Source: Macrostomum lignano (lineage: Eukaryota). From it: a stretch of DNA of 64,000 bases. The notes beneath the pieces were generated by a model. That model saw only the letters and a program-made list of their open reading frames with translations, made no database searches and was not told where the DNA came from. Below, in pieces: positions 1,184-64,000 of the stretch. The stretch's first letter is position 1. The number at the start of each line of letters is the position of its first letter. Position numbers and translations under genes: made by a program. Location of the stretch: contig NIVC01000136.1 of assembly GCA_002269645.1 (NCBI GenBank), positions 248,001-312,000 of the forward strand, read 5' to 3'.

Positions 1184-1252
1184 TAGTTATGGTAAACAAG
1201 CCGGCAGCCGATAGACTGCGAGGCGAGAAACGAATGTGCCAAGCGCACTGTC

Positions 1253-6709: not shown

Positions 6710-9700
6710 GGCGGCGGCGGCGGCGGCGGCGCTTCAGACGTTGTCACCGACGGAGACAGCTGCCGTGGCCCCGCCCCGCCTGACTGGCCCAATCCTGCCG
6801 CTTGCTCAGGTGGGATGATCGCCGGCACCAGGTGGTCGGCATGCCGCCGCACGATACGCTCGTCGGGCAGGCGGCACTCGTAGGACAGCGGCCCGGTCCG
6901 CCGGCTCACGGAGGCCGGCGCCCACTTCTTCGGACCATTGAAGTGGCACCAGGACACCGTCGCCTTCTTCGAAGTTGCGATCCCTGGCTCGCAGGTCGTG
7001 GTACTCCTTTTGCGAGTCCTGACTGCGCCTGACTGTAGCAGAGACATCGGGCCGCACGATGTTTAGAAGCGTCCGCAGCTGCCTGCCCATCATCAGCTGG
7101 CAGGGTGGAGCACTGGTTGTGCTGTGCGGAGTGACCCGGTAGGTCAGCAGGAACCGAGCTAGCCGAAACTGCAGGGACGCGGGCCGCCCCTTCGCCAGGG
7201 CCGCCTTCACCGTCTGGACCGCTCGCTCGGCCAATCCGTTGGACGATGGATGATATGGAGCCACTTTGATGTGCCGGATGCCGCTACTGGCCAAGAAGTT
7301 GCTCATCTCTTGGCTCACGAAATTCGGACCGTTGTTGCTCACTACGACCGCTGGCAATCTCAGCTGACTGAAAGTCCTTCTCAGCCGATCGATTGTGGCA
7401 GCACTGGTGGCGGACTGGCAAATGTGAACTTCAATCCATTTCGAATGAGCGTCCACCAATACTAACAGCATTTTTCCCTCGACTGGTCCAGCGTAGTCCA
7501 GGTGGATCCGGGACCACGGCTTGTCCGGACACGGCCACGGCTGCAGGAGGGTTGGCAGCGGGCAGTTCTGATGACGCTGGCACTCGCCACAGTTCTGTGA
7601 CAGCTGCTCGATGTCCCGGTCCAATCCGGGCCACCAGAAATATCCTCGGGCCAGGGACTTCATCCTTGAAGCTCCTTGGTGGCTCTGATGTAGATAGTCG
7701 AGCAGCGCTTGTCGTCCCTGAACCGGCACAATCACACGGTTGCCCCACAGCAGGCAGCCGTCCTCCAGGCTCAGTTCTGCCGCCCTGACCGCATACGGCT
7801 GCAGTTCCGCATCCAGCCGAGCACGAACCGCAGCACTCGACTTGTCCAACCGCGAACCTGAGCAGGCGTCACGGGTCCCTCATTGAACGCATCGATGAGC
7901 AGCACTACCTCAGCCGGTGAGAGCGTCTCCACTGTCTTCGTCGGCAGCGGCAGCCGACTCAGCGCGTCAGCCCGCAGCAGCGAAGTTCCCTTGCGATACT
8001 GCAGTCGATACGAGTAGTTCGAAAGCAGCAGAGCCCAGCATTGGATCCTCGCTGAAGCCAGTGGTGGCATGGCTTTGCTCTCGTATAGCAGGCCCAGTAG
8101 CGGCTTGTGGTCGCTCTTGAGCTCGAAGGTTTTGCCATAGAGGTAGGCGTGGAAGTGCTTGATCCCAAAAATGATCGCCAGGGCTTCCTTCTCTGTCTGC
8201 GAATAGTTCCGATTCTCTCGGCGAGCGATCGGAACGCAAAGGCAATCGGCCTTTCAAGGCCATCAATCCGGTGGCAGATAACGGCCCCGACCCCGCATGG
8301 CGAACTATCGCACTCCAGAATCACCTCCTTTTTGACGTCGAAATGGACAAGCGCCAGCAAGCTCAGTATCAGCTCCTTGCTGCGCCGGAAAGCATCGGAC
8401 TGTGCTTCGCCCCATCGCCAGACAGTTCCTTTCTCGAGAAGCCGGTGCAGAGGAGCCAGAACGCTGGACAGGTTCGGCAGAAATCGGCCGTAATAGTTGA
8501 GGAGGCCCAAGAAACTCCGCAACTGCGTGACGTCCTTTGGCATCGGCGCGTCAACGATCGCGTTGACTTTGTCACTCATCGGATGCAGGCCCTGGACGTC
8601 AATCCGATGCCCCAAATAGGTCACCGAATTCTCCATGAAGCGGCACTTGTCAAGCCGGCACTTCAGCCCAGCATCCTTCAGGCGCTGCAGGACTATCTCC
8701 AGATTCTCGAGGTGCTCAGCATCATCGGCGCCGGTCACCAGCACGTCATCAATGAAGGTTGCCGTATGCTTTGCGCCTTGCAGCAGGCCGTCCATGGTCC
8801 TCTGGAAGATTCCAACTGCTGGTGAGATTCCAAACGGTAGTCTCGTATACCTCAGCAAACCCTTCGAGGTGTTGATGGTTCACAGGCGCTGGGACTCTTC
8901 ATCGAGCGGAAGCTGCATGTATGCCTGGCTGAGGTCCAGCTTGGTGAACTTTTGGCCGCCGGTGAGCTTGGCGAACAACTCCTCAATCCTTGGCAGCGGG
9001 TAGAAGTCCATCTCCACATCCTGGTTTACCGTGCACTTGAAATCTGCGCAGATTCTGATGGAGCCGTCCGACTTCAGCACCGGCACGATTGGGGACGCAT
9101 ACTCCGAATCGGAGACCGGCCGCAGGATGCCCTGCTGAATCTCCCGCTCGAGCTGCTCTTCCACCTTGGACTTCAAAGCGAAGGGCACCTGCCGCGCCTT
9201 TATGAACTTGTGTCGCGCCCCAGGCTTCACTCGCAGTTTCAGAGGTTCACCCGTGTAGCAGCCGAGGCCACTCGAGAAAACGGGGCTGAACCTCTCTAGT
9301 AACTTCTGCACTTGCTGATCCTTTGGAGCCGACGCTTCGGGCAGCTGCTTGACGCTCCCCCAATTTAACGGCAGCGCAGCCAGCCAGTTCCTACCGATGA
9401 GGCTGGAACTGGATCCAGATACCACTAGAAGAGGAAGAAGCTGCGCTGCTTGGCTTTACCTGGAATCTCTGCAGACACGCTGATCTGACCAATCCCGCTG
9501 ACTGGCTGTCCGCAGTAGTTCCGCAGCCGAATCGGGGTCCGCTCGAGCTCAGGAGCCCCGCCCAGCAGGTCGTGATAGGCTCTAGCCGATATCAGCGATA
9601 CAGCCGCGCCCGTATCGATCTCCATCTGGCAGGACACTCCGTTGAGCAGGACCATGGTGATGTACGGCGGCACTTTGGCAGCTGCACTGGGCAAGGTGTT

Positions 9701-13060: not shown

Positions 13061-13682
13061 CTCTCATTTGGGTGGGTCTTGGGGACGAGTTGGGACAAGT
13101 TGGACCGCCCCATTGGGGAGTGTTACTCCCATATGTAGAGAGTATTCCCTGCTTGGGTGCACAGAGGTATATAAAATACACAAGCTCCAACGAAAAAAAA
13201 TCCGGAAATATTTTCCGGCAAGGAAGCCTTAGAAGTTCCACATCCAAAGCAACCTGGCTGTCGTGAGAAACCAGTATTGTATAGAATTATCTAAAACCAA
13301 ATGCACATGAACACTTCGTGTGCTGCAGATTGACCCAGTAAATAGACACAAACTTAGACGAAGTTCGCAATGAATACTTCACAAACAAAGCCCCGAAATT
13401 CCGAAATAACATCCAGCAAAAAAAGAAAATAACGCAGCAAGGCAGGTAAAATTGATGCGCTGCATGGCGCAAAGGTTGCGAGTGACGCATGCAGTACCTG
13501 GGGATTCCAAACACTGTCTGGCAGAGATAAAAGTACATTTAGACACGGGATTCTGGCCAACCGAATCCCCAGCAGAGGCAAACAGTCTGATGCAAATGGC
13601 AAACCGCGTGACGCGTCTGGAATGCGAAGTGCAGCCTGCAGTCACGTGAAATTTATCCGATGGGCAGGGAATGCTTCTTCTG

Positions 13683-13690
13683 TATATAAA
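13683..13690 (+). promoter_or_regulatory. Putative TATA box of FReP unit B within a ~450-bp 5' flank conserved across units
   Basis: TATATAAA ~75 bp upstream of the ATG. The homologous site is TATTTAAA in C and TAAATAAA in D, E and F. Preceded by a conserved GTCACGTGAAATT. Confidence 0.4.
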
Positions 13691-13762
13691 TGCAGCCATT
13701 TTACAGGATGCAGCTGCAATCCTCAGATTACCGATACAACAACGAAAGGTGAACTTGACTCG

Positions 13763-16700
13763 ATGCAGCTCTTTCAGTTGCGAGTTTCTGCAGCGTTGGC
13801 TCTGCTGCTCTGCTCGCTGGCAGCCGGCCGCCAGGTCTCCCAGTGCGCTCCCGCTGACTCTCCGCGGCTCCGCTTCGTGGCGCAGCTCAGCGTGAACGGC
13901 TGCGCGCTGTTCGTGCACGACACGGGAGCGAGCGACGGTCCGCACTTGGCAGTCGAGCCGCTCATGTGCGTGACGGACAGCCTGAGAGGCATTGTTCCCC
14001 GATTCGACTTCATCACCCAGCAGCTGTACTTTAGCGTTCCTGTATTGATGAGGGATGCTGGGATGCTGGCAGAGGCTCAGCGTCAACTGCGGCATCTGTC
14101 ACCGAGGTCTGTGAGCTTTGCCACGGTGACCAACATCAGCGTCTCAGCCGACACCCGCTCATCGATTCGGGTTTTGAGCTTCCTGTGGACTCCGAATGAG
14201 CCAATCGCCACTCTGAGACTGAGAATCGATGAAAATAAGTTTCATTCTTTTATAAGAGCACTAAGAATGTCGAAATTGAACCTTCTGAAAAATATCGTAC
14301 CATCAGATTTCAAGTGGATTAAGGGTCAATCTCATCTGAACTATTTACCTATGGAGACTCTTCAAAATGTGAGATTGTCAGCTTCAATCATTTCGAACGG
14401 CTCCTGTCATGACATTCAAAGCCGCATTATGCTGCAAAACGACAGCTTCATCGAAGTCGGCTTGTACAGGAAAAAATTCTTACCCGTGTGCCGACAGCTG
14501 AGGTTCAGTCGGTACGTCAATCTCGAGAACTGCTCTGCCCGAGCGCACCAGAGACTCGACATCAAGGGCCACTTCCTCATCGAGCCTCTGCTGTGCCACA
14601 ACATCTCCAGCTTGAGCAGCGAGTCAGTCAGGTATGACTACAGCCGAGACATGCATTACCTGAAGCTGGATCTGGTGCTGCAAGATGAGGCCACACGCGA
14701 TGCTGTGAGGACTCAGTTGGCCGACTTGTCGCCTCGCTCGGTCGATTTCATGCGGCTGTGGACTGCTGAGAGATCGGTGAGCTCTTCGTTGAGTGCTCGG
14801 TTCGAGGTCGGTCCGCTGATGGCGTCGGCAGACTGGAGGTCCGCTCAGCTGCGGCTGCTCTGCGGAAACTGGACGGAGTGCCGCGATCTCAAGTTAGCTG
14901 ACATTTTCTAGGAAATGTTTTTCCCTTTTTACTGGTTTTTACTGAAGCTACGAACGTTTAATTAGTCATAGCGAGTAATGGAGTTAAAAAGGATTATAAC
15001 TAAACATTTCTGACACAAAAAACGCAGAATCCTTACCCGATTTCTCATAATTTAACATATTTGTATGCAAGCTACGAAGTACATGATTTTTTCTACTACA
15101 TTTTCTCAAAAAAAGAGTTTTCCATATTGCGCATTTGACGCATTTGCATTTCTTTCTTTGAATAATGGCTAAATCGTATTTTCAATTCTACAGTTATTTT
15201 TTTCTTTCGTAGCACTGTGTCGTATAAAAAGTAATTGACGACTTTCAGGTCTGCTCTGCTGGCGGAGCCCTCTGACCTGTGGCGACACGTGCAGTGGCGG
15301 GTGACGTCGCTGGTTGCTGAGCAGTGCCTCTCCAAGTCTAGCCGAATCACTTCATCATGGAGAATGAAACCACCTGGAAGAGCAGACAGCTGCTCCAGTC
15401 TGAAGCCCTGCGCCAGACTGCAACGCGCCTCTGCTCGACGCACCGCGGCGTTTCAAATGCTTCCAGACGGTCGCTGGTTCCTGAAGATTCAGCAGCGACT
15501 TACTGGCAGAGTGAGTTTCCAACGAAACTGGACTGAGTACGAGACTGGCTTCGGTGACGGCACCGATTTCTGGATTGGTGAGAGGCAGTTTTGTATCGGC
15601 TAATATGCTAGTTGACACATGCACTTTCAACTGACGAAAGATAGATTGAAAGATTAACTGCTTGGTCATTAAAAAAATGTGAAGTTAAAGTTGCGCCATG
15701 ACGAAAATCTGTATATTGTCCTTTCCCGTCTGATTTGCGTTTCAAGTCTTCGGGCTGCTTCAGTTATTCAGGAGGCTTCTGCCACTATCCATCCATTGTC
15801 CGGTTCAGAGTGCGAGTAGAGTCCTGAATCCAAATTTGGGCTTCCTTGGCTCTGACTGTGTGTGCACAGCGGTCTTTTATACCGCTAGGACCGTCAATGG
15901 CACAATAGTGTGCTTCAGATAGTAGAAAGTTACCCAGGACTGGTCAATGAAAATGATTTTCAGACGCCTTTCAGACAACAAAAATGTCAAAAAACAAAAG
16001 TCCTCAACCTAATCTGAAGCAAAAGGTAGTAGAAAGCACTTCGGCCCTTTACGAGCTGTTCGAACAAGAAAGGCTGGCTTGCTGTGTTGGCAACCGCAGT
16101 GCTTTTGCTGAAATGGAGGAGCACCAGCCAGAGCAGCACCAGCCAGAGCAGCACCAGCCAGAGCAGCACCAGCCAGAGCAGCACCAGCCAGAGCAGCACC
16201 AGCCAGAGCAGCACCAGCCAGAGCAGCACCGGCCAACTCAGTTCTTCATCTGATGCTTGCAAATGACAGACTCTTAAATTTTTACCTTAGACTTGACCTT
16301 TACCTTTGACAATTAAAAACCCGTCTTACAGTCTCAGAACAGCAGGCCGCTCAGCTGGGATTTCAGAAGGCTTGAAATGGATCATTTTGGCAATTAAAAA
16401 AATTAGCTTCACCATCTGCTATGAAATGCACATTGGTAAAATATTTTTCTCAACATCCGAATGACGAGTCACCTGGCAGCAGCGGCGACAAGTCGAGCAG
16501 AAGTGACTCAGACTCAGCCGCTCTCCTCCCGCAGGTCTCTCCGCCATCCACTCGCTCAGCCAGGGCGGCGTCACCCTCAGAGTGGAGATGAAGCTGGGGA
16601 ACGGCTCTGAGCTGCATGCGGAGTACGCGGGATTCCAGGTGGGAGACGCCAGCACTGGGTATCGGATGACGTACCGAGAGATGCTGAGGGTCAGGTCCGT

Positions 16701-16944
16701 CAGCATTGACTCTTTGGAGCACCACAAAGGCATGCGGTTCTCCACGATGGACAGGGACAATGACGAAGCGAGTGATTCATGCTCAAACCAACGGGTAAAA
16801 GGAGGCTGGTGGTTCAACGAGTGCCTATACGTCAACCCTAACGGAATTTTCAAACTCCATTTTATTGGTTTGAAATATATGATCTGGACCTATGGCTCTG
16901 CTATTCTGTCTCTTCGTGAAATGCGGCTGATGCTGCAGATTTGA
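13763..16944 (+). CDS. Secreted fibrinogen-related protein, unit B: join(13763..14892,15249..15577,16535..16944), 622 aa
   Basis: Signal peptide MQLFQLRVSAALALLLCSLAAG. Intron phases (2, 1) join the exons in frame. FBG motifs: QQRLTGRVSFQRNWTEYETGFG, FWIG|LSAIHSL, FSTMDRDND, GGWWFNECLYVNPNG. The exon-1 donor (ctcaa|gttag) is inferred from phase and from where the paralogs diverge. Confidence 0.82.
16118..16232. repeat. 15-bp minisatellite (GAGCAGCACCAGCCA)n in intron 2 of unit B
   Basis: Tandem repeat read directly. Same unit at 55245-55277 and 56610-56812. Confidence 0.95.
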
Positions 16945-19695: not shown

Positions 19696-21681
19696 TTAAG
19701 CTCGGCCTCGTAGGAATTGCACCATCGGCCCGCTGCCGCGTGCCCGTCCTCTAGTGCCGTCCTCTTTGCGGAGGAGGATCCTGGCCGATCCCCCGTTGGT
19801 GGTGCCTCCTGAGATTGAACCGTCAGTGAAGTAGAGGGCTGCGTCGGGACAACGCTGCTCAATCGCGGAGAGCACTGCCTCGGTGGCAGGTCCTTCATGC
19901 TCGGGGAGTTTGGTGAACATCTGCACCCCGCAATCAACCAGCGAGTCCCATGGGGGGTTGCGGGTCGTAGGTATAGGCAGACACGGGAGAGGTATCATAG
20001 CGTTGCAGATGGCTCTGGCTTGCTCTCGTAGCCCTTTGTTGGCCGCTAGCCGGGTGTTGAGTTGCCTGTCGCAGATCTGCCGGAACGGATCGTCGGCCGG
20101 GCGGCGGTTTACTTTCTCGTAGGCCATCAGGGCCCTACGGCGGGCTTCGAGGCTGATCGGACTGACGTTTGTTTCCATATAGATGGCTTCCACCGGTATC
20201 GAGTGTGGCAATCCCGTGATGGCTCTGAGGGCTTCTCTTTGAGCGCGGTCCAGGTCGTCGAGGCGGGTACTGGACAGCCATGGAGTCCAGGCAGCAGCAG
20301 CGTGCCAGACCACAGATTCGACGAGTGCTCGATAAACCCGGAGGAGCAGGGCGCGGTCCCAGCCCCATTCGCGATGGGCGAGCGCGAGGATGATGGCGGT
20401 TCTGCGTGCCATCTTCTCTTTGACCGAGTTGGAGTGCTTATCGAAAAGGAGGCCATTGTCTATCCACACCCCGAGGAACTTCAGTTCTTTCTTGGGGGGG
20501 ATCGAGTGGCCGTTAAGCGAGAGGTGAAGAGCGCGGTCGCGGTCGGCGCGGTCCCTGCTGAAGAGGCAGCATTCGGTCTTGGATGGATTAAGGTCAATGC
20601 GCAGGTGATCTGCCCACTGTTCGATCTTCTGGAGCGCATCTTGAGTGCGAGCAAGGAGCTCACGGATGTCGCGGCCCGTCGTCCAGAGTGCGATGTCGTC
20701 CACGTAGCCGCTATATTCGACATTCGCCGTCATGTAGTCGGACCAGGCGTTAACGTAGAGAAGGAAGAGGGCCGGCGAGCTGACAGCCCCTTGCGGGACT
20801 CCCTCACGGAGCCGGCGCCATTTTCCAGTGGTCGCGCCGATTCTAACGGCAATTTGGCGGCCCTCAAGGAAACTGTCAAACCATTTGACCATACAGGCGG
20901 GAAGGCCCTCGTCCATCATCCGGGCGAGGAGTCGGGCCCTCCAGACTCTGTCAAACGCTCTGGAGCAGTCTATGAGCACGGCAAGGGTTTTGGGATGCGG
21001 GTTGCGCTCCCAACCGTCTTGAATGGCCTGGACCAGGCGGGCGACCTGTTCTTCGCAGCCCCGGCCTCGTTGGAAGCCGGCTTGCCATAGTTGAATCTTT
21101 CTATGTCTCTCCAGCCAGTAGTAGAGGCGGTCCAGAATGAGTCTTTCGAGTATTTTGCAGCAGATGGAAGTGAGGCTAACTGGTCTGTAACTGCTTCGAT
21201 CCTTGGGGTCCTTGTCCTCCTTGAGCAGAGGAATGATGATAGCTTGCTTCCAGGGGCCAGAGCAGTGTCCAGTGCGCCAGCAGCGGTTGAAGACCTTGAG
21301 CCACGTGGCTCTCCATCGGTCGGGCAGGTGCAGAAAGAACGCTGCTTCAATGCCATCGGGGCCGCATTTCTTGCTGGGATCCAGTCTGTGGATAGCTCTA
21401 AGCAGTTCACCCTCGGTGAAGTCACGGCGATAGTTGTCGTCGTCCACCTCATAGGAGGCTAGGTGCGTAGCCGTTTGCACTTTGAATTTGCGGTGGGTGG
21501 CGTCGTGCTTCAGAGTGCTAATGTCTTCATAATATCTGCCGAAGGCGTTGGCTTTATCCTTGTCGGTACAGAGTTCCTTTCCGTCTACGACCAGGTTCTC
21601 GTTAGGGTGGGCCGCTTGTTTGCCGTTGCTAAGGCATTTGATGGTGTTCCAGACCTTTTTGGGGTCCTCGGATTCGGCCAT
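19696..21681 (-). CDS. LINE reverse transcriptase and start of RNase H (largest intact ORF fragment)
   Basis: 661-aa ORF with non-LTR RT motifs (QAGFQRGRG, LIDCSRAFDRVW, GYVDDIAL, KFLGVWID). Confidence 0.9.
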   Translation of the reverse strand: MAESEDPKKVWNTIKCLSNGKQAAHPNENLVVDGKELCTDKDKANAFGRYYEDISTLKHDATHRKFKVQTATHLASYEVDDDNYRRDFTEGELLRAIHRLDPSKKCGPDGIEAAFFLHLPDRWRATWLKVFNRCWRTGHCSGPWKQAIIIPLLKEDKDPKDRSSYRPVSLTSICCKILERLILDRLYYWLERHRKIQLWQAGFQRGRGCEEQVARLVQAIQDGWERNPHPKTLAVLIDCSRAFDRVWRARLLARMMDEGLPACMVKWFDSFLEGRQIAVRIGATTGKWRRLREGVPQGAVSSPALFLLYVNAWSDYMTANVEYSGYVDDIALWTTGRDIRELLARTQDALQKIEQWADHLRIDLNPSKTECCLFSRDRADRDRALHLSLNGHSIPPKKELKFLGVWIDNGLLFDKHSNSVKEKMARRTAIILALAHREWGWDRALLLRVYRALVESVVWHAAAAWTPWLSSTRLDDLDRAQREALRAITGLPHSIPVEAIYMETNVSPISLEARRRALMAYEKVNRRPADDPFRQICDRQLNTRLAANKGLREQARAICNAMIPLPCLPIPTTRNPPWDSLVDCGVQMFTKLPEHEGPATEAVLSAIEQRCPDAALYFTDGSISGGTTNGGSARILLRKEDGTRGRARGSGPMVQFLRGRA

Positions 21682-27200: not shown

Positions 27201-28145
27201 TGTGCTGTCTGTTCTATCAGTATTGTGCTGTCTGTTCTATCAGTATTGTGCTGTCTGTTCTATCAGTATTGTGCTGTCTGTTCTATCAGTATTGTGCTGT
27301 CTGTTCTATCAGTATTGTGCTGTCTGTTCTATCAGTATTGTGCTGTCTGTTCTATCAGTATTGTGCTGTCTGTTCTATCAGTATTGTGCTGTCTGTTCTA
27401 TCAGTATTGTGCTGTCTGTTCTATCAGTATTGTGCTGTCTGTTCTATCAGTATTGTGCTGTCTGTTCTATCAGTATTGTGCTGTCTGTTCTATCAGTATT
27501 GTGCTGTCTGTTCTATCAGTATTGTGCTGTCTGTTCTATCAGTATTGTGCTGTCTGTTCTATCAGTATTGTGCTGTCTGTTCTATCAGTATTGTGCTGTC
27601 TGTTCTATCAGTATTGTGCTGTCTGTTCTATCAGTATTGTGCTGTCTGTTCTATCAGTATTGTGCTGTCTGTTCTATCAGTATTGTGCTGTCTGTTCTAT
27701 CAGTATTGTGCTGTCTGTTCTATCAGTATTGTGCTGTCTGTTCTATCAGTATTGTGCTGTCTGTTCTATCAGTATTGTGCTGTCTGTTCTATCAGTATTG
27801 TGCTGTCTGTTCTATCAGTATTGTGCTGTCTGTTCTATCAGTATTGTGCTGTCTGTTCTATCAGTATTGTGCTGTCTGTTCTATCAGTATTGTGCTGTCT
27901 GTTCTATCAGTATTGTGCTGTCTGTTCTATCAGTATTGTGCTGTCTGTTCTATCAGTATTGTGCTGTCTGTTCTATCAGTATTGTGCTGTCTGTTCTATC
28001 AGTATTGTGCTGTCTGTTCTATCAGTATTGTGCTGTCTGTTCTATCAGTATTGTGCTGTCTGTTCTATCAGTATTGTGCTGTCTGTTCTATCAGTATTGT
28101 GCTGTCTGTTCTATCAGTATTGTGCTGTCTGTTCTATCAGTATTA
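24293..28145. repeat. 23-bp satellite array, ~3.85 kb (~167 units)
   Basis: Tandem repeat read directly. CCATC and other variant units occur in the left part; essentially homogeneous from ~26750. Confidence 0.99.
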
Positions 28146-29220
28146 TAACGGTAGGAGTAACAAGCCATTTTTCCACCATTAGAAAAAGTTACAAACTGGA
28201 AAATGCTTCCTTGAAAATTTTTTTGCTGCGCCGTAACGGAGCAACGCAGGCGCATTTATTAAAAAACACAGGCTACCTTTTTTGTTGCGCACCTTCTCAA
28301 AGAAAAATAAGGTCGCCAGCTCTCCGGAATGTCGAGATATTCGACGATTTTGTCAGAAAGCTAAACACTATGTTCTCTAGTTTCGCTGTTGAAGCATTCA
28401 TGCCGTCGGTGCAATGACGGGGCCATAAGGGAATGCTTGACAGACTAGCCGAGGATGTAGAGCAGTGAGGTTTGCCCACTGTCGATGCTGGAAACTGGGC
28501 AGTTGGAGAATTTCGCATCGGGTGTTCACAGTCACTTCATAGTAGCCTGGCAGAACCATCGAATATCTCGACGGTCCGAAGGGCTGAAGATTTGATTGTT
28601 GTTTGATGAAGTGAAGGTGCGCAACAAAAACTATGAGAAAAAGGGAAAAAAACTCAGAGGGGGGATTCTACTCTTGGTAATTTTACGAGTAAACTCGGGT
28701 GTCTCCAGAAATTTGTATTGCATAAAATTATCTAAAAGCAAAAACCGAGATAGCACTTCATGAGCTGCAGATGAAAGAACGACCCAAGCTAAAAAACACC
28801 GTATTGAAGCTTAGACGAAGTTCGCATTGCAGACTGCAACAACAAAGCACCGGAACTTCCGAAAGGTCATCCAGCACAAACAGAAAATAACGCAGAAAGG
28901 CAGGTAAAATTGATGCGCTGCATAGCGCAAAGGTTTCGAGTGACGCATGCAGCGCCTCGGGATTCCAGACACTGTCTGGCAGAGATAAAAGTGCATTTAG
29001 TCACGAGATTCTGGCCAACCGAATCCCCAGCTGAGGAAAACAGTCTGATGCAAATGGCAAACCGCGTGACGCGTCTGGAATGCAAAGTGCAGCCTGCAGT
29101 CACGTGAAATTGATCCCATGGGCAGGGAATGCTTCTTCTGTATTTAAATGCAGCCATTTTACAGGATGCAGCTGCAATCCTCAGATCACCAATACAACAA
29201 CGAAAGGTGAACTTGACTCG

Positions 29221-32200
29221 ATGCAGCTCTTTCAGTTGCGAGTTTCTGCAGCGTTGGCTCTGCTGCTCTGCTCGCTGGCAGCCGGCCAGGTCTCCCAGTG
29301 CGCTCCCGCTGACTCTCCGCGGCTCCGCTTCGTGGCGCAGCTCAGCGTGAACGGCTGCGCGCTGTTCGTGCACGACACGGGAGCGAGCGACGGTCCGCAC
29401 TTGGCAGTCGAGCCGCTCATGTGCGTGACGGACAGCCTGAGAGGCATTGTTCCCCGATTCGACTTCATCACCCAGCAGCTGTACTTCAGCGTTCCTGTAT
29501 TGATGAAGGATTCTGGAATGCTCGCAGAGGCTCAGCGTCAACTGCAGCATCTGTCACCGAGGTCTGTGAGCTTCGCCACGGTGACCAACATCAGCGTCTC
29601 AGCCGACACCCGCTCATCGGTTCGGGTTTTGGGCTTCCTGTGGACTCCGGATGAGTCAGTAGCCACTCTGAGACTCGGCTTTGCAGAGAAGAACACATAT
29701 GAAACTCTAAAACTCCGAGAAAACATAATTCTAAGACTTCTGAATATCGACCCAATGAGAACCTTACTAATTCAAAGTACCGAGACGCAGATCGTAGAGA
29801 AAAAAAATGAAAGTTCAATAATCGAGACTCTAAAAAATGTAAAACTCTCAGCTACTCTTCTGTCGAATAGTTGTTTCCATGACATTCAGAGCCGCATCAT
29901 GCTGCAAAACGACAGCTTCATCGAAGTCGGCTTGTACAGGAAAAAATTCTTACCCGCATGCCGACAGCTGCGGTTCAGTCGGTACGTCAAACTCGAGAAC
30001 TGCTCTGCCCAAGTGCACCAGAACCTCAACATCAAGGGCCACTTCCTCATCGAGCCTCTGCTGTGCCACAACATCTCCAGCTTGAGCAGCGAGTCAGTCA
30101 GGTATGACTACAGCCGAGACATGCATTACCTGAAGCTGGATCTGGTGCTGCAAGATGAGGCCACACGCGATGCTGTGAGGACTCAGTTGGCCGACTTGTC
30201 GCCTCGCTCGGTCGACTTCATGCGGCTGTGGACTGCTGAGAGATCGGTGAGCTCTTCGTTGAGTGCTCGGTTCGAGGTGGGTCCGCTGATGGCGTCGGCA
30301 GACTGGAGGTCCGCTCAGCTGCGGCTGCTCTGCGGAAACTGGACGGAGTGCCGCGATCTCAGGTTGGCTGACATTTTGTTTAGGAAGGTTTGAGGTTTCA
30401 TACACGTAAAGTCTAAATTAGTTTTTATACTTTTTATTTGCTTTAGACTCAACAGATTATGATGTTAGCGCGAATACGAGCTAAAACTAAGGTAGCAGTT
30501 GGGTGCAGAGTAGGTTTGAGTGGATACGTTTCTGATGGCCCGAATTACTGACCTTATAAATGCGGTAGCACGCATGGCAAAAGTGCTAAAATTTACATGA
30601 TAATTATATGCTGGCGGCATTGTTACTCTACTACTTTATACCAAGACAGTGAAAAGACGTGAATGAAGTAAATGTAGTCTTCAAGGGTGGGAAGATTCCA
30701 TATTTGCTTTTTACTTTGCTGTTTGGTAGAGGAGGTAATACATGTGGGGCCCCACACCCCCGCTTCACTCTCAAGCCACACCCCTGCCTCCTTTCGACTT
30801 TGCCCACCGGTACACAAATCCTTTGTAGAATGTTGACTTGGCCAGACGCGACATCCTTGCCTATATGTATCGAAAAAAACGTCTTTTTAGCAGAGATGAT
30901 TCCTGCCGTCCTAAAAATAGAGTGTTGCTCTTTTCTCCCGTAAAATCTAAAAAATAACTTCTGTTTGCAAAAAATCTTCCAACTTGAAAAACTTCCAACT
31001 TCTAGTAATTCGAATCTTGGTAACACGCAAATGCAAGGCGACTGACTTATTCACGAAAAACCACACGCATTTTATATTCTTGATTGCCTTTAGCAGCCAT
31101 GTCTAGGGTTTTTAGCCCTTGTTAATAGCTCGTAGTTGGGATAGAGGTGAACATAAAATGGAATACATTCGTGTGGATGTAAAATTATAGGATTTGAGGC
31201 AAACATTGAAACTGTCAATACATAGAATGTCAGGCAATGTCTATCTGACTCTAAAACATGTATTGTCAAACTCTGAACTCTGTCTCTGCCTCTCCCTACG
31301 TGCCTTGGATCCTTTGAAACTTCCATCTTCTTTTCTGTTTCCTCTTCTCTCTCTTCTCTCTCCTCTTCTTTCGTCTCTTCCCTCTCCTCTCTATTCTTTT
31401 CTCTCTCCTCTCATCTCTTTTTCTCGTGTTTCTGTTCTCTTATCTCTCATTTCCCTCTTTTATCTCTTCTGATTTCTCTCTGCTCTATCTCTCTCTTCTC
31501 TCTCCTTTCATATCTCTGCTCTCTGCTCTCCCATCTCTCTTCTCCTTTCGACTCTCTCCTCTCTTCATTCTCCCCTTTTCTCTCCTCTCTCTCCCTTCCC
31601 CTCTTTCCCCTGGTTCTTGATTCTCTACCCTCCTCTCTCCTCACTCACTTCTATCCCACTTTGTCTCACCTCTCCTGTCTCATCTCTTCTCTCTTCTCTC
31701 CTATCTCTCCTTTCTCTCTATTCTTCCATCTCTAATCTGTTCACTCTCGTCTCTGCTCTGCACTCTTCTTTCCCCACTTTTGACTGCTATTTTTCCTTTC
31801 TTCTCTTTTATTCTCTTCCCTCTTCTATACTCTCACTCTAAAAAGCAGCCAAACTTTAAAAGCGCACATCGCTGTTCAGGATTAACCTTTAAACTTGAAA
31901 TTTCACACGATTGTGTTACAGATTATTGTCTGTGTCAAACTTAAAGAGGATTAATAAAAGTAGAGCGGCGCTAAGGAGGATTTTGTGAAAAATCCTGCTT
32001 TTCTAGCAGTTTTTTGCTTTTTTGAGTAGAAAGACTTAGACTTAGGAAATTTTAAGGTAAGCCTAAGACATTCTCCGTAGTGAGTTCAGGGTGGGTGCAA
32101 AAATTGGTTTGATTTGCTTGAGCGGTTTGGGCGTCCATAGCGATCAAAATTGTACACAGACAGACACACAGACAGACACAGACAGAGTTTTGATTTTTAT

Positions 32201-41288: not shown

Positions 41289-44200
41289 ATGCAGCTCTTT
41301 CAGTTGCGAGTTTCTGCAGCGTTGGCTCTGCTGCTCTGCTCGCTGGCAGCCGGCCAGGTCTCCCAGTGCGCTCCCGCTGACTCTCCGCGGCTCCGCTTCG
41401 TGGCGCAGCTCAGCGTGAACGGCTGCGCGCTGTTCGTGCACGACACGGGAGCGAGCGACGGTCCGCACTTGGCAGTCGAGCCGCTCATGTGCGTGACGGA
41501 CAGCGTGAGAGGCATTGTTCCCCAATTCGACTTCATCACACAGCAGCTGTACTTCAGCGTTCCTGTATTGATGAGGGATGCTGGAATGCTCGCAGAGGCT
41601 CAGCGTCAACTGCGGCATCTGTCACCGAGGTCTGTGAGCTTCGCCACGGTGACCAACATCAGCGTCTCAGCCGACACCCGCTCATCGGTTGGGGTTTTGG
41701 GCTTCCTGTGGACTCCGGATGAGTCAGTAGCCACTCTGAGACTTGGCTTTGGAGAGAACATTCGATATGAAACTCTACATCCCGAAAACATTGTTCTAAG
41801 ACTTCTGAATATCGACTCAATGAGAACCTTCCTAAATCAAAATACCCAGATGCAGAGTCGAGAAAACAATGAAAATTCAACAATCGATGCTCTTAAAAGG
41901 GTGAAGCTCTCAGCTACTCTTCTGTCGAATGGTTGTTTCCATGAGGCTCAGAGCCGCGTCATGCTGCAAAACGACAGCTTCATTGATGTCAGCGTGTACA
42001 AGCAAAAATTCTTACCCGCGTGCCGACAGCTGCGGTTCAATCGGTACGTCAATCTCGAGAACTGCTCTGCTCGAGTGCACCAGAGACTCGACATTGAGGG
42101 CCACTTCCTTATCGAGCCTCTGCTGTGCCACAACATCTCCAGCTTGAGCAGCGAGTCAGTCAGGTATGACTACAGCCGAGACATGCACTACCTGAAGCTG
42201 GATCTGGTGCTGCAAGATGAGGCCACACGCGATGCTGTGAGGACTCAGTTGGCCGACTTGTCGCCTCGCTCGGTCGACTTCATGCGGCTGTGGACTGCTG
42301 AGAGATCGGTGAGCTCTTCGTTGAGTGCTCGGTTCGAGGTGGGTCCGCTGATGGCGTCGGCAGACTGGAGGTCCGCTCAGCTGCGGCTGCTCTGCGGAAA
42401 CTTGATGGAGTGCCGCGATCTCAGGTTGGCTGACATTTTGTTATAGGTTGAAACCTTTGAAGACTTTATCTTTCGTTTACCGTGATTTTATATTTTATAC
42501 TTTTGCTTTCGAGCTGCTCTTCTCTGAACAAGTCATTATGAGTTTTGTAGTGAGATTAAGAAAACTTTTTAGTATCAGTTTGGAAGAAGAGTAAATTTAA
42601 GTCTGTAAGTTTCAGGTGGCCCGAATTTATGACGTAAAAAACACACAAGCACAAATAGCATAGTTTTATAGTTTATGAAATAATTGCATGTAAGCGGCAT
42701 CATTACTATTTACCACATATACCCAGACTATAATATTTTACATTATTTACCATTACTTGCTTTCGACGCCGCTTGCTTGTTTGACTTTATCTATTTATTT
42801 ATTCTTAGCACTGTGCCGTTTACAAAAAACAATTGACGACTTCCAGGGCTGCTGTGCTGGCGGAGCCCGCTGACCTGTGGCGACACGTGCAGTGGCGGGG
42901 GACTTCGCTGGTTGCTGAGCAGTGCCTCCTAAAGTCCAACCGAATCACTTCATCATGGAGAATGAAGCCATCTGAAGATACAGTCAGCTGCTCCAGTCTG
43001 AAGTCCTGCGCCAGGCTGCAATGCGCCTCTGCTCAACGCACAGCGAACTCTTCCAGTGCGGTTCAACTGCAGCCAGACGGTCGCTGCTTCCTGAAGATTC
43101 AGCAGCGACTTACTGGCAGAGTGAGCTTCCAACGAAACTGGACTGAGTACGAGACTGGCTTCGGTGACGGCACTGACTTCTGGATCGGTGAGTGGCTTGT
43201 CAATTGGTGTGCGTCAGGAACCGAAGCAGGTCTTATCAACTGCCATAGGAGTGTCATTTAGGCCGGACAATCAATAACGTTCGCTGGTTGGGGGCTCTAT
43301 CAATTTTAGCTTAACTTTTTTCTTTTTTTCTGGTGAGCGGCTTCTTTCATCGATTTTTCATATTGCGTGTCAGGAATGGAAGCAGATCTTGTGCACTTAT
43401 TAGCAGAAGGCTAGTTGACTAATTCTAAGTGAATGGTGGAATGCATTCAATTGATGGAGGGGTTTGAAGGATTGCTCAGCTGGATAAAAATGTTCAGTTA
43501 ACGTTGCGTCATAAGCTGGGTGATGCTCAATTTTGTATTGGCGTTGCGAGGTCTTGTGCGGCTTCAGTAAAACTTCTTTTTTCATGGAGTGCACCAAAAA
43601 GATGAGACCGATGAGACGCTTTTTTCATTCTTAGATCGAGGAGAGACCTGAATACATGCTTCCCCATAATTTTGAGGGAAACAGGAATATTGAGCTGCAT
43701 TTTTTTCAATGAAATCCAAAGTATTACGAAGGAGTTTTGTTGTTAAAGATTCGCTAGTAGTTCATTTAGTATAGCTCGCAGACCAAGCATTAAGCACAGC
43801 TGCTACAGTTGACCCATACATTGTGCAAGAAACAATTCAGATTTGCTGCATGCAATAATCTGAAGAAAGACTCGTCGTAGGCGTCACAGGGAAAAAAAGC
43901 CTGTTTGAGGTTGAAGGCGAAGATCCGCAGGCTCTTCCTGTTTGAGGTTGAAGGCGAAGATTCGCAGGTTTGCTGAGAGAGCTGCTGCTGGCTTCATGCA
44001 CAGTTTTGTGACGACTGCTTTACTCTGGTTGCTGTCATCTGTTTGCGCTTGTGCCAATCATGAGCAGCGCTCTCACGCCGACTGCTTTTCTCTGGTTGCT
44101 GTCATCTGTTTGCGCTTGTGCCAATCATGAGCAGCGCTCTCATGCCGACGCGCTCCTTTGTCAGTGAAACCAAATTGTTTCTGTCAAAGCGCACTCGTTT

Positions 44201-49796: not shown

Positions 49797-50035
49797 GTAT
49801 TGTGCTGTCTGTTCTATCAGTATTGTGCTGTCTGTTCTATCAGTATTGTGCTATCTGTTCTATCAGTATTGTGCTGTCTGTTCTATCAGTATTGTGCTGT
49901 CTGTTCTATCAGTATTGTGCTGTCTGTTCTATCAGTATTGTGCTGTCTGTTCTATCAGTATTGTGCTGTCTGTTCTATCAGTATTGTGCTGTCTGTTCTA
50001 TCAGTATTGTGCTGTCTGTTTTTATCAGTTTTTAT
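49797..50035. repeat. 23-bp satellite array right of the tyrosine-recombinase element
   Basis: Tandem repeat read directly. Confidence 0.95.
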
Positions 50036-53296: not shown

Positions 53297-56231
53297 GTCC
53301 GCACTTGGCAGTCGAGCCGCTCATGTGAGTGACGGACAGCCTGAGAGGCATTGTTCCCCGATTCGACTTCATCACCCAGCAGCTGTACTTCAGCGTTCCT
53401 GTATTGATGAGGGATGCTGGAATGCTCGCAGAGGCTCAGCGTCAACTGCGGCATCTGTCACCGAGGTCTGTGAGCTTCGCCACGGTGACCAACATCAGCG
53501 TCTTAGCCGACAACCGCTCATCGGTTCGGGTTTTGGGCTTCCTGTGGACTCCGGATGAGCCAGTAGCCACTCTGAGACTCGGCTTCAAAAGGATTGTTGT
53601 CAAGACCGATTCAAGTAAAGCTTCAGGTTCAAGAATTTTACAGGAAAGTTTACCTCTCCAGTTCTTTCAATCAGTGTATAACCAGCTGAAGCGCAGTGAT
53701 GACTTTGGAAGCTCACCACAAGAGGCTCTTGAAAAGGTGAAGATATCAGCTTTTATCATTTCGAACGGATCTTGTCATGAGGTTCAGAGCCGCGTCATGC
53801 TGCAAAACGACAGCTTCATCGAAGTCGGCTTGTACAGGAAAAAATTCTTACCCGTGTGCCGACAGCTGCGGTTCATTCGCTACGTCAAACTCGAGAACTG
53901 CTCTGCCCGAGTGCACCAGAGACTCGACATCAAAGGCCACTTCCTCATCGAGCCTCTGCTGTGCCACAACATCTCCAGCTTGAGCAGCGAGTCAGTCAGG
54001 TATGACTACAGCCGAGACATGCACTACCTGAAGCTGGATCTGGTGCTGCAAGATGAGGCCACACGCGATGCTGTGAGGACTCAGTTGGCCGACTTGTCGC
54101 CTCGCTCGGTCGATTTCATGCGGCTGTGGACTGCTGAGAGATCGGTGAGCTCTTCGTTGAGTGCTCGGTTCGAGGTCGGTCCGCTGATGGCGTCGGCAGA
54201 CTGGAGATCCGCTCAGCTGCGGCTGCTCTGCGGAACCTTGACGAAGTGCCGCGATCTCAGGTTGGTTGGAATTTTCTGAGGGGTTTTCAGCTTTTATTGC
54301 ACCAGATTCAAAAAAGAGTTTACTTTCTAGACTCTCTTTACTTCACAGGACTTCTTGAGTGTTTGCAAGAGTAATACAAAATCCCTTTTCGTGTCAGCTT
54401 GGTTGCTATTGAGCGATCAGATCAGGCTATCAATGCTTTTGTATTGGTTTTTTTTCTTTTTTAAATTTTTTTGGCGTTCAAAAATGGATTTGACAATATC
54501 CAGGTCTGCTGTGCTGGCGGAGCCCGCTGACCTGTGGCGACACTTGCAGTGGCGGGTGACATCGCTGGTTGCTGAGCAGTGCATCTCCAAGTCCAGCCAA
54601 ATCACTTCATCATGGAGAATGAAAGCGTCTGAAGATGCAGTCAGCTGCTCCAGTCTGAAGTCCTGCGTCAGACTGCACAGCGCCTCTGCTCCACGCACAG
54701 CGGCGTTTCAAATCCTGCCAGACGGTCGCTGGTTTGTGAAAATTCAGCAGCGACTTACTGGCAGTGTGAGTTTCCAACGAAGCTGGACTGAGTACGAGAC
54801 TGGCTTCGGTGACAGCACTGACTTCTGGATCGGTGAGCGGCGTTTGTGTATCAGCTAATATTGTGTGACGGAGGGTTGGTAGCAGATCTTGTTAATCTTA
54901 TGGTGAAATTATGGTTGAATCATGCACTTTCAACTGATGTAATACGGACTGAAAGATTAACTGCCCGGCTAAATAAAAAAGTTAAGTTGAAATTGCGCCA
55001 TGATGGCAATGGTCAACACTGGCCTTTTCCGCCTGATTGGCGTTTCGGGTCCTTATTTTTGGTCTTTGGTTTTTTATACAGCTAGGACTATCAATGCCAA
55101 ATAGTTTTTTTTCAGATGACTAAAATGTCATCCAGGACTCATCAATGAAAAGTATTTGACACTCCGTCCAGACAACGAAAATGTCGAAAAATGGAAGTCC
55201 CAAAGCTACTCTAAAGCATAAGGCAGTAGACAGCGGTTCAGTCCAGCCAGAGCAGCACCAGCCAGAGCAGCACCAGCTTCTACGAGTACAACCATTGTTG
55301 CAGTTTTTGCGTATATTTCTATGAAGTTTGCATAAAAAACCTTGTTCCCCGACTCAAAACATTAACTAGTAAATTTTGCGCTGTTCACGTCACGTATAAT
55401 ATTAATGGCCTCATGAGGCCTTATGATAGATACATGGCGTACTTAAGAAAGGTTAGAACTTATTGACTTAAAAAAATCCACAAAATTTTCCTTTCGTGCG
55501 CGCCCTTCTACGAGATATTTATCTGAGTCGCAGTCAAGTTTCCGAAGCGATGCATTCAGATGACATTTCGCTTCAGTCCTGGCCTGATACAATTAAAACC
55601 CGTCTTGAAGTCTAAGAACAGCCGGCCACTCATCTGGGACATCAGAAGGCTTTGAATGGATAATTTAGTCAGTAAACGAATTTAGCTGCACCATCTGCTA
55701 TGGAACGCACATTGTAAAAAATTTATCCCAGGATCCAAATGACGAATCACCTGACAGCAGCGGCGACTAGCCGAGCAGAAGTGACTCAGACTCAGCCGCT
55801 CACCTCCCGCAGGTCTCTCCGCCATCCACTGGCTCAGCCAGGGCGGCGCCACCCTCAGAGTGGAGATGAAGCTGTGGAACGGCTCTGAGCTGCATGCGGA
55901 GTACGCTGGATTCCAGGTGGGAGACGCCAGAACTGGGTATCGGATGACGTACCGAGAGATGCTGAGGGACAGGTTAAATGTCAGCTATGTCGCTTTGGAG
56001 AACAGCAAAGGCATGCAGTTCTCTACGATGGACAGGGACAATGACGTACACAGAGGAATCTCATGCTCAAACAGATGGGGAAAAGCAGGCTGGTGGTTTA
56101 ATGCTTGTCTACACGTCAACCCTAACGGACTTTTTCCTTCGCGGGAGACAACAGATGGCAGCTATATCGTCTGGAACTCTGGCTCTGTCTGGCTGCTTCT
56201 TCGTGAAGTGCGGCTGATGCTGCAGATTTGA
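53125..56231 (+). pseudogene. FReP unit E: join(53125..54260,54504..54832,55813..56231) with TGC>TGA at codon 68 (53326-53328)
   Basis: All exons and splice sites are otherwise intact and in frame; one nonsense codon relative to the paralogs. Confidence 0.82.
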
Positions 56232-56812: not shown

Positions 56813-57074
56813 GCCGACTCAGTTCTTCAGCTGATGCTTGCAACTGACTGACTCATAAATTAATTTTGTCTTAGACTTCTCCTTACTTCTTCTTTACCTT
56901 AGATTTTTTCATTTAGTCAAGTTTGCGAACAGAAGTATTTAGATGACATTTCGCTTCAGTACTGACCTGATACAATTAAAAACCCGTCTTGCAATCTCGG
57001 AACAGCCGGCCGCTCAGCTGGGATATCGGAAGGCTTAAAATGGATAGTTTAGGCAATTAACAAATTTTAATTTA

Positions 57075-63828: not shown

Positions 63829-64000
63829 ATGCAGCGCTTTCAGTTGCGAGTTTCTGCAGCGTTGGCTCTGCTGCTCTGCTCGCTGGCAGCCGGCCAGGTC
63901 TCCCAGTGCGCTCCCGCTGACTCTCCGCGGCTCCGCTTCGTGGCGCAGCTCAGCGTGAACGGCTGCGCGCTGTTCGTGCACGACACGGGAGCGAGCGACG
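63829..64000 (+). CDS. Start of FReP unit F (MQRFQLRVSAALALLL...), running off the window
   Basis: Identical to the start of unit E; its integrity cannot be judged here. Confidence 0.7.
   Translation, partial: MQRFQLRVSAALALLLCSLAAGQVSQCAPADSPRLRFVAQLSVNGCALFVHDTGASD

What the first reader, a model, noticed from the sequence alone, without database searches (positions are those of the whole stretch)
14221..14410. Hypervariable AT-rich segment inside otherwise near-identical exon 1
Seen: between conserved ...ATLRL and QSR(I/V)MLQND each copy has a different 60-70 aa segment. B: RIDENKFHSFIRALRMSK...; C 29676-29880: GFAEKNTYETLKLREN...; D 41744-41945: GFGENIRYETLHPEN...; E 53581-53780: GFKRIVVKTDSSKASG.... 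All stay in frame despite length differences, while the GC-rich flanks are almost identical in DNA. Inference: flanks homogenised by gene conversion around a diversifying, cassette-like specificity segment.
Basis: partly seen in the sequence, partly recalled or inferred. Interest (0 to 1): 0.8.

Follow-up and report, generated by a model that had tools for sequence, protein, structure and literature searches.

The report
Fast-evolving linker from a read-through intron
The variable AT-rich stretch is real, but it looks like a former intron now read as a loosely constrained linker between two domains of a flatworm lectin-like gene family whose other parts are kept alike by gene conversion, not like a specificity cassette.

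Summary
In exon 1 of tandem Macrostomum lignano genes (signal peptide, two copies of an undescribed domain, C-terminal fibrinogen domain), a 132-147 nt core (B 14222-14353) is unalignable between types. Its flanks differ by 0.2-5%. The core is AT-rich (GC3 0.39 against 0.75) and open only in the coding frame.

Gene conversion of the flanks is supported. Synonymous divergence is 0.03-0.28 in the flanks and 0.5-1.3 in the well-aligned 22 codons after the core. Flank trees are star-like. One partition significantly contradicts the core tree (AU p=0.0002). Blocks with pS of 0 occur even between subfamilies.

The "diversifying cassette" reading is not supported:
- Within-type dN/dS is 0.77-0.98.
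- No stand-alone donor copies exist.
- AlphaFold confidence over the segment is below 50.

New here: four more distant subfamilies carry a canonical phase-2 intron (82-96 or 296 nt) at this position. The genomic spacing between the anchor motifs is the same there (141-153 nt) as in the window subfamily (120-147 nt, open frame). The core is therefore most likely an exonised intron that evolves nearly neutrally and blocks conversion. Type III copies (E, F) still carry a 60-nt in-frame GT..AG element. RNA data are needed.

The parts
13763..14892 (+). Gene B, exon 1: signal peptide, domain copy 1, variable linker, domain copy 2. It ends at a phase-2 donor, CTCAA|GTTAGC.
   Evidence: ORF. The spliced model P0001/P0032 is 100% identical. 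tblastn mapping. The donor is read from the sequence.
13832..14221 (+). Domain copy 1 of B. It is GC-rich, homogenised among paralogs, and ends with the ..ATLRL motif.
   Evidence: pi 0.002-0.15 and GC3 0.73. dS 0.04-0.28 between core types. Star-like tree.
14222..14353 (+). Variable core of B (type I, 44 codons). It is unique in the genome and is proposed to be an exonised ancestral intron plus short linker remnants.
14354..14419 (+). 'Tail' of B: 22 codons (ETLQNVRLSASIISNGSCHDIQ). Conserved as protein but AT-rich and old at synonymous sites.
   Evidence: Between types dN is 0.08-0.48 and dS mostly 0.5-1.4, with one type pair saturated. GC3 0.36. The outgroup counterpart is GC3-normal (read from the sequence).
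14420..14892 (+). 3' flank of B: a partly homogenised 'mid' stretch, then domain copy 2, which is almost invariant among 30 paralogs.
   Evidence: AF2 model of residues 237-378 has pLDDT 90.
14893..15248 (+). Intron 1 of B. It lies at the position after domain 2 that corresponds to the ancestral intron after domain 1. It is not alignable between paralogs.
15249..15579 (+). Gene B, exon 2 (connector and start of the fibrinogen C-terminal domain). Boundaries approximate.
16534..16944 (+). Gene B, exon 3 (rest of the fibrinogen domain, with the DRDND loop and variable patches).
29677..29823 (+). Variable core of C (type II, 49 codons). Gene C exon 1 is 29221-30362.
41745..41885 (+). Variable core of D (type II, 47 codons; homologous to C's core). 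Gene D exon 1 is 41289-42424.
53581..53721 (+). Variable core of E (type III, 47 codons). Gene E exon 1 is 53125-54260.
53615..53674 (+). 60-nt in-frame GT..AG element inside E's core (CAA|GTAAAG ... TTCTTTCAATCAG|TG). The donor lies 34 nt after LRL, within the range (+32 to +38) of the ancestral intron donor in outgroup subfamilies.
   Evidence: It is spliced out in models P0006, P0009 and P0016 and retained in P0005 and P0034.
53326..53328 (+). TGA in place of the conserved Cys-69 codon in E. F carries the same stop, so both are probably pseudogenes on this haplotype.
63829..64000 (+). Start of copy F, cut by the window end. Its exon 1 is identical to that of E.

Best explanation
The window holds a tandem array of Macrostomum lignano genes for secreted proteins. 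Each protein has a signal peptide, two copies of a lineage-specific ~140-residue alpha/beta domain (exon 1) and a C-terminal fibrinogen-related domain (exons 2-3). They are probably lectin-type recognition proteins.

The flagged segment is the linker between the two domain copies. In the ancestral gene each domain copy was its own exon, followed by a phase-2 intron. More distant paralogs still have that intron between the copies. In the subfamily seen here the intron is no longer removed and is read through as coding sequence. Only the requirement of an open frame of length 3n constrains it, because domain 2 and the fibrinogen domain lie downstream. It therefore evolves almost neutrally, keeps intron-like AT content, and has drifted into unalignable types.

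The flanking domain-coding DNA is repeatedly homogenised by gene conversion between paralogs, within and between arrays. Conversion tracts stop at the diverged core. This makes the 5' edge sharp and the 3' edge graded.

Shown: the anatomy, the rate and composition contrasts, the mosaic phylogeny, and the intron in the outgroup subfamilies. Inferred: the direction of change (exonisation rather than intron gain), neutrality of the linker, the heterology barrier, and the lectin function.
For: Family and architecture:
- P0001 is 100% identical to gene B and carries PF00147 at E=4e-37.
- Three exons.
- At least 30 near-full paralogs in the genome.

Conversion of the flanks:
- Between core types, dS is 0.04-0.28 (domain 1) and 0.03-0.15 (domain 2), against 0.47-1.37 in the tail, with one pair saturated.
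- Star-like flank trees against deep type clades in the core+tail tree.
- E, L011 and L013 have type III cores but group with types I/II in the next 52 codons at 99% SH-aLRT. The AU test rejects a type III clade there, p=0.0002.
- PHI test: 0 of 1000 permutations as low as observed for the whole exon and for mid+domain 2.
- pS of 0.00-0.15 in terminal blocks against 0.7-0.97 elsewhere when B is compared with 45%- and 60%-identical subfamilies.
- Intron 1 is unalignable. Identity falls from 0.88 to 0.33 at the exon edge.

Near-neutral core:
- dN/dS is 0.77 (type II) and 0.98 (type III).
- Inside the 63-nt stretch (21 codons) around the 60-nt element, 17.5 nonsynonymous and 5.5 synonymous differences fall on 49 and 14 sites.
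- pLDDT is below 50 over residues 154-203.

Intron origin:
- Canonical GT..AG phase-2 introns with stops or frameshifts lie 10-12 codons after the LRL motif in four outgroup subfamilies.
- Genomic distance between the two anchor motifs is 141, 142, 146 and 153 nt there, against 120-147 nt of open frame here. Mature outgroup linkers are only 18-23 aa, against 40-49 aa here.
- Core GC is 0.39 and intron GC 0.38.
- Intron 1 sits at the equivalent place after domain 2 (LRL + 11 codons, phase 2).
- Type III retains a donor at +34 with a 60-nt in-frame acceptor.

Translation: the frame is open only in the coding frame in all six types.
Against: - No residual DNA similarity links the outgroup introns to any core. 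The intron origin therefore rests on position, length and composition only.
- The type III donor is phase 1, while the outgroup introns are phase 2.
- No RNA data could be reached. Retention of the core in mRNA rests on the open frame and on NCBI gene models. That those models are transcript-based is my recollection.
- In the subclade L014/L016/L017/L018 the core has 8-15 nonsynonymous and 0 synonymous differences per pair, apart from the near-identical L014/L018 pair. This could be positive selection. The clade was picked after seeing the data and the pairs are not independent.
- The full-length AF2 model was poor overall (mean pLDDT 45.9). Low confidence in the linker is therefore weak evidence of disorder.
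- The PHI test on domain 1 alone was not significant (p=0.53).
- GC3 of outgroup domain-coding DNA ranges from 0.50 to 0.84. The high GC3 of the flanks therefore cannot be pinned on biased gene conversion.
Confidence: 0.6

Rival explanations
1. The core is a specificity-determining segment kept diverse by positive (diversifying) selection, possibly exchanged as a cassette, while conversion homogenises the scaffold around it.
For: - Discrete types persist beside homogenised flanks.
- The frame is preserved in every type.
- One subclade has 8-15 nonsynonymous and 0 synonymous differences per pair in the core.
- The proteins look like recognition lectins.
- Several linker types are interspersed within one array.
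Against: - Pooled dN/dS is 0.77-0.98 within types and never clearly above 1.
- There are no stand-alone donors.
- The segment lies between domains, not in the ligand-binding fibrinogen P-domain. That domain has its own diverged patches.
- Composition is intron-like.
- pLDDT is low.
- Frame preservation is explained by the downstream domains.
Confidence: 0.12
2. The core, or part of it, is still an intron or an alternatively spliced 'exitron'. It would be removed in some transcripts, so its sequence is neutral and linker length varies by isoform. This applies at least to type III copies (E, F and relatives).
For: - A 60-nt, 3n-long, stop-free GT..AG element sits at the ancestral intron position in type III, with a donor scoring 6-7 of 9 and a pyrimidine-rich acceptor.
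- UniRef gene models P0006, P0009 and P0016 splice it out.
- Substitutions inside it look neutral.
Against: - NCBI models of the same genes retain it (P0005, P0034).
- L015 and L019 have lost the GT yet keep the frame open.
- Types I, II and IV have no in-frame candidate.
- An intron that was always removed would not stay open and 3n-long in six independent types.
Confidence: 0.2
3. The paralogs are young (about dS 0.05-0.1). The core, tail and introns have been hit by locally raised mutation, for example AT-rich slippage or targeted hypermutation. The flanks would then not have been homogenised.
For: The diverged parts are the AT-rich ones. Indels are frequent in the core.
Against: - The tail keeps its protein sequence at dS of 0.5-1.3.
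- Trees of adjacent partitions conflict.
- Blocks with pS near 0 occur between subfamilies that are only 45-60% identical.
- The 3' half of exon 3 is not AT-rich and is also old, with pS 0.3-0.57.
Confidence: 0.04
4. The flanks are alike only because of very strong purifying selection, including on synonymous sites, without gene conversion.
For: Domain 2 is almost invariant as protein. GC3 is high. A long antisense ORF overlaps domain 1 in every copy.
Against: - A 10-20-fold drop in dS is far beyond usual codon-bias effects.
- Mosaic sharing and conflicting trees.
- About 450 nt of upstream non-coding DNA is also ~91% identical within the array.
- Domain 2 has low dS without an antisense ORF of 200 aa or more.
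Confidence: 0.04

Closest known systems
Gastropod FREPs and the VIgL family (Biomphalaria glabrata FREP, CREP, GREP)
   Same: Secreted multigene family. Its members have one or two N-terminal non-lectin domains, a connector and a C-terminal fibrinogen-related domain. Sister proteins use the same N-terminal module with a C-type lectin (P0024, P0026). Gene conversion contributes to sequence patterns in both (review PMC12074976).
   Different: The N-terminal domains here are not IgSF. They have no Pfam hit, and the pLDDT-90 model has no PDB fold neighbour. In snails diversity is reported in the IgSF exon and is claimed to be partly somatic. Here conversion homogenises the domains, and the variable part is an inter-domain linker with dN/dS of about 1. 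Somatic change was not testable.
Exonised or retained introns, and 'exitrons' (Marquez et al. 2015, from my own knowledge)
   Same: An intron-derived, 3n-long, stop-free stretch inside a coding exon. Type III copies keep GT..AG signals, and two annotation sets disagree on whether it is spliced.
   Different: Alternative splicing is not demonstrated. In types I, II and IV the splice signals are gone. Exitrons are usually thought to arise from coding exons by intron loss, not from a read-through intron.
Concerted evolution with islands that escape conversion (for example MHC, KIR or globin paralogs)
   Same: Low synonymous divergence in converted tracts beside old, diverged islands. Gene trees are mosaic.
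   Different: In MHC-type cases the island is the ligand-binding part, with dN above dS. Here the island is a linker with dN about equal to dS.
Donor-cassette gene conversion systems (chicken Ig pseudo-V genes, trypanosome VSG, Neisseria pilS)
   Same: A variable segment between conserved flanks that could guide recombination.
   Different: No silent donor copies were found. Every match to a core lies in a full gene copy, and B's core is unique.

Membership tests
Fibrinogen-related domain (FReD) proteins, Pfam PF00147 | Significant match to the Fibrinogen_C profile | tested here: met
   P0001 (gene B) scores E=4.2e-37, 128.5 bits against a cut-off of 22, over residues 450-604. The paralog models also carry PF00147.
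Fibrinogen-related domain (FReD) proteins, Pfam PF00147 | Calcium-dependent carbohydrate or acetyl-group binding | not testable with these tools
   Only the DRDND loop and the WWF..C..NPNG motifs are visible in exon 3.
Gastropod FREP / VIgL | N-terminal immunoglobulin-superfamily domain(s) | tested here: not met
   The exon-1 protein has no Pfam family at E<=1. The AF2 domain model is alpha/beta. The best PDB match has E=0.12 and TM 0.25, and no Ig fold matches.
Gastropod FREP / VIgL | Somatic diversification within individuals | not testable with these tools
   This needs single-animal long-read amplicons.
Interlocus gene conversion (concerted evolution) | Tracts of low synonymous divergence beside old sequence in the same genes | tested here: met
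Interlocus gene conversion (concerted evolution) | Phylogenetic conflict between adjacent partitions, or a recombination signal | tested here: met
   (AU p=0.0002). Domain 1 alone gave PHI p=0.53.
Donor-cassette conversion system | Silent stand-alone donor copies of the variable segment | tested here: not met
   B's core has 1 match in 764 Mb. E's core has 12 matches, all inside gene copies.
Diversifying selection on a recognition segment | dN/dS above 1 in the segment | tested here: not met
   0.77 and 0.98 within types II and III. One subclade picked after the fact has dS of 0. No codon site models were run.
Exitron | Internal to a coding exon, GT..AG boundaries, length 3n, no stop | tested here: met
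   Met for type III only: E 53615-53674. Not met for B, C and D.
Exitron | Both the spliced and the retained form present in RNA | not testable with these tools
   Gene models disagree. No transcript contigs could be reached.
Exonised ancestral intron | Homologous position holds a spliced intron in outgroup paralogs | tested here: met
   Four subfamilies have GT..AG phase-2 introns of 82, 84, 96 and 296 nt.
Exonised ancestral intron | Sequence homology between the intron and the new coding stretch | tested here: not met
   Local alignment scores are at shuffle level: z from -1.5 to 2.6 over 30 comparisons. This is expected if the event is old, but it leaves the origin inferred.

The most novel reading that the evidence does not exclude
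The read-through intron is a regulated exitron, or a positively selected spacer. Each paralog would then offer its own linker isoforms between two recognition modules. Together with the diverged fibrinogen P-domain loops, this would give a flatworm a combinatorial, conversion-scaffolded repertoire of secreted lectins. That would be an independent invention comparable to snail FREPs, built on a domain of unknown fold.
Probability: 0.15. Interest if true: 0.7.

Novelty: new variant of a known kind. Interest (0 to 1): 0.45.

Why it matters
The finding gives a clean, testable example of how an intron can become protein sequence in one branch of a gene family. It also shows how such a stretch, once diverged, can act as a barrier that splits conversion tracts. 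That barrier produces a pattern easily mistaken for immune-type hypervariability.

It also describes a large, undescribed Macrostomum-specific family. More than 30 genes in this subfamily and further related subfamilies combine a domain of unknown fold with fibrinogen or C-type lectin domains. This is a candidate recognition repertoire in a flatworm model with transgenesis and RNAi. The family's real candidates for specificity are the diverged loops of the fibrinogen domain in exon 3, not the linker.

Tried and rejected
- Pfam and PDB sequence searches of the exon-1 protein found nothing.
- Foldseek of the pLDDT-90 domain model against the PDB found nothing below E=0.1.
- The full-length AF2 model was too poor (mean pLDDT 45.9) to say more than "low confidence" for the linker.
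- I considered that the whole segment is a plain intron with a chance open frame. I rejected this. C, D and E have no GT at the divergence boundary. Six types are open in the coding frame only. The tail is under purifying selection.
- I considered B's core to be a frame-shifted version of type II. Local DNA similarity is at chance level, z=0.7.
- Searches for donor cassettes gave none.
- The search for residual similarity between outgroup introns and the cores was negative.
- The search for transcript contigs encoding P0001 or P0009 found no record.
- I considered GC-biased gene conversion as the cause of GC-rich flanks. I kept it only as a suggestion, because outgroup GC3 spans 0.50-0.84.
- The literature search found no paper on this family.
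Full report
**What is there**

The window is G000:C136:248001-312000 of a 764-Mb assembly. Close protein matches are all named Macrostomum lignano.

Four complete copies and one cut copy of a gene lie head to tail, 11-15 kb apart. Their exon 1 coordinates are:
- B: 13763-14892
- C: 29221-30362
- D: 41289-42424
- E: 53125-54260
- F: from 63829 to the window end

An upstream copy A has its exon 1 just outside the window and its exon 2 at about 5469.

The database model P0001 is 100% identical to B. Each gene has three exons. Exon 1 is about 1.13 kb. It encodes a signal peptide and two mutually homologous ~140-residue domains. Exons 2 and 3 encode a fibrinogen C-terminal domain (PF00147, E=4e-37).

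The N-terminal domain has no Pfam or PDB sequence match. A search of 1.8 billion representative proteins found only 14 relatives. Of the seven not already known that I scanned against Pfam, four carry a fibrinogen domain, two a C-type lectin domain and one has no Pfam domain. An AlphaFold2 model of domain 2 reached pLDDT 90 but has no Foldseek neighbour in the PDB (best E 0.12, TM 0.25). The family therefore resembles snail FREP/CREP proteins in layout but is not a member, because the IgSF criterion fails.

**The observation**

The DNA alignment of B-E and a codon alignment of 30 paralogs found in the genome confirm the pattern.
- Nucleotide diversity is 0.002-0.05 over most of both domains and 0.48-0.60 over about 50 codons after the motif ..ATLRL.
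- The 5' edge is abrupt. The 3' edge is graded.
- GC3 is 0.73-0.76 in the flanks, 0.39 in the core and 0.36 in the next 22 codons. Intron 1 has GC 0.38.
- Cores are 93-147 nt long, always 3n.
- The cores fall into at least six discrete types: I (B only), II (A, C, D and others), III (E, F and eight others), IV, V and VI.
- Between types the cores are no more alike than shuffled sequence, apart from a short shared 3' end among III, IV and V.
- Each type is open only in the coding frame. Shuffles are open in 2.5-9% of cases, a product of 7e-9. The stretch is therefore translated, or at least selected to stay open.

**Gene conversion in the flanks**

Nei-Gojobori estimates between core types give the following dS values:
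- 0.04-0.28 in domain 1
- 0.03-0.15 in domain 2
- 0.47-1.37 in the 22-codon tail (one type pair saturated), which aligns reliably and is under purifying selection (dN 0.08-0.48)
- 0.15-0.71 in the next 52 codons

Trees of core+tail show deep, supported type clades with branches of 0.15-0.52 substitutions per site. Trees of the two domains are star-like, 0.02-0.07 deep, with types mixed.

E and its haplotig relatives L011 and L013 have type III cores. In the adjacent 'mid' partition they group with types I/II at 99% SH-aLRT. An AU test rejects a type III clade there (delta lnL 82, p=0.0002). A PHI test is significant for the whole exon and for mid+domain 2, but not for domain 1 alone.

Against the 45%- and 60%-identical subfamilies, 21-25-codon blocks with pS of 0.00-0.15 sit next to blocks with pS of 0.7-0.97. 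Intron 1 is unalignable between paralogs, and identity drops from 0.88 to 0.33 at the exon edge.

The 3' half of exon 3 is also old (pS 0.3-0.57), while its first 45 codons are nearly identical. The paralogs are therefore old, and parts of them are kept alike by conversion.

**No sign of a diversifying cassette**

- Where cores can be aligned, dN/dS is 0.77 (type II) and 0.98 (type III).
- One subclade (L014/L016/L017/L018) has 8-15 nonsynonymous and no synonymous differences per pair, apart from the near-identical L014/L018 pair. The clade was chosen after seeing the data and the pairs overlap.
- B's core occurs once in the genome. All 12 matches to E's core lie inside gene copies.
- AlphaFold2 on the full protein gives pLDDT 26-44 across residues 154-203. 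The model as a whole is weak.

**What the core most likely is**

In four more distant subfamilies a canonical GT..AG intron lies 10-12 codons after the LRL-type motif that ends domain 1. These subfamilies are P0013-like, P0018-like, P0023-like and P0022-like, at 35-65% identity. The intron is phase 2 and contains stops or a frameshift. The published gene models skip it. Its length is 82, 84, 96 or 296 nt, derived and the mature sequences.

The genomic distance from that motif to the next anchor (E/D-x-L-x-x-V/I) is 141, 142, 146 and 153 nt in the three short-intron subfamilies. In the window subfamily it is 120-147 nt, with one 93-nt deletion variant, and it is one open frame. Mature outgroup linkers are 18-23 residues, against 40-49 here. 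The excess equals the intron.

Intron 1 sits at the equivalent place after domain 2 (LRL + 11 codons, phase 2). This fits an ancestral structure of one domain per exon. Distant relatives also carry a C-x(4-12)-C loop right after domain 1, like the CGNWTEC loop after domain 2. This subfamily has lost it.

I conclude that the intron between the two domain exons has become coding sequence in this subfamily. That explains four things:
- the intron-like composition;
- the near-neutral substitution pattern;
- the frequent in-frame indels;
- the failure of conversion to cross it.

The origin remains an inference, because no sequence similarity to the outgroup introns survives.

**A loose end**

Type III copies, except L015 and L019, keep a donor (CAA|GTAAAG, GTAAAT or GTGAAG) 34 nt after LRL. 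They also keep an acceptor (TTTCAATCAG|) 60 nt downstream, in frame. In E this is 53615-53674.

UniRef-only models P0006, P0009 and P0016 splice it out. NCBI models P0005 and P0034 retain it. Other UniRef models remove larger or frame-shifting pieces of the region (P0008, P0010, P0011, P0012, P0015).

I could not reach RNA data. Whether this is an exitron in use or a prediction artefact is open. Types I, II and IV have no in-frame candidate.

**Verdict**

The best-supported account is a read-through former intron serving as a loosely constrained inter-domain linker, inside a conversion-homogenised lectin-like gene family. This is a new variant of known processes, of moderate interest. The undescribed domain and the family itself may be the more useful leads.

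Noticed in passing
window 13832-14221 and 14471-14892 (both domain copies of B): The ~140-residue N-terminal domain has no Pfam or PDB sequence match. A pLDDT-90 AlphaFold2 model has no PDB fold neighbour (best E 0.12). It was found only in 14 representative proteins. The named ones are all Macrostomum, and the domain is joined to fibrinogen or C-type lectin domains.
   Followed up: partly
window 16534-16944, 34533-34955, 55812-56228 (exon 3 of B, C, E): The fibrinogen domain shows the same mosaic. Its first 45 codons are nearly identical (pS 0-0.06). Its last ~90 codons are old (pS 0.3-0.57), with patches where pN is at least pS around the DRDND loop and the C-terminal strands. These are likelier specificity determinants than the linker.
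   Followed up: partly
window 53326-53328 and copy F (L007): E and F share a TGA in place of Cys-69 and are identical over exon 1. This indicates a recent ~10.7-kb duplication of a pseudogene, or an assembly duplicate. The haplotig copy L011 has a different stop (TAA), and L013 is intact.
   Followed up: partly
window 57082-57393: An extra exon-3-like fragment with three in-frame stops lies about 850 nt downstream of E's exon 3.
   Followed up: no
window 1-1185, 24294-28144, 35586-36536, 49795-50029: Arrays of a 23-nt minisatellite (GTTCTATCAGTATTGTGCTGTCT, up to 167 copies) lie in spacers and introns of the gene array. They create long spurious ORFs.
   Followed up: no
window 19696-21681(-), 6806-8795(-), 47332-49608(-): Retroelement ORFs sit between the genes: a non-LTR-type reverse transcriptase, Ty3-like RT/RNase H/integrase pieces, and an RT ORF next to a SAP-domain ORF. 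The Ty3-like pieces lie just downstream of copy A's exon 2.
   Followed up: partly
window 13379-14095(-), 28867-29550(-), 40935-41618(-), 52699-53454(-): A 227-251-codon antisense ORF overlaps the promoter, 5' UTR and domain 1 in every copy. It is probably a by-product of GC3-rich sense codons.
   Followed up: no
window 14878-14892 and the equivalent in C, D, E: The last 10 codons of exon 1 (CGNWTECRDL, the Cys loop after domain 2) have dN/dS of 1.68 across paralogs. The stretch is too short for a test.
   Followed up: no
G000:C3268 and C3286 compared with C136:240-312 kb: Two shorter contigs repeat the array with different copy content. Neither has a counterpart of B. This suggests haplotype or homeolog copy-number variation in the cluster.
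   Followed up: no
window 56611-56815: A 15-nt tandem repeat (AGCACCAGCCAGAGC, 13.7 copies) lies downstream of gene E's exon 3. It appears to be translated as a Ser/Gln/Pro-rich insert in the UniRef model P0016.
   Followed up: no
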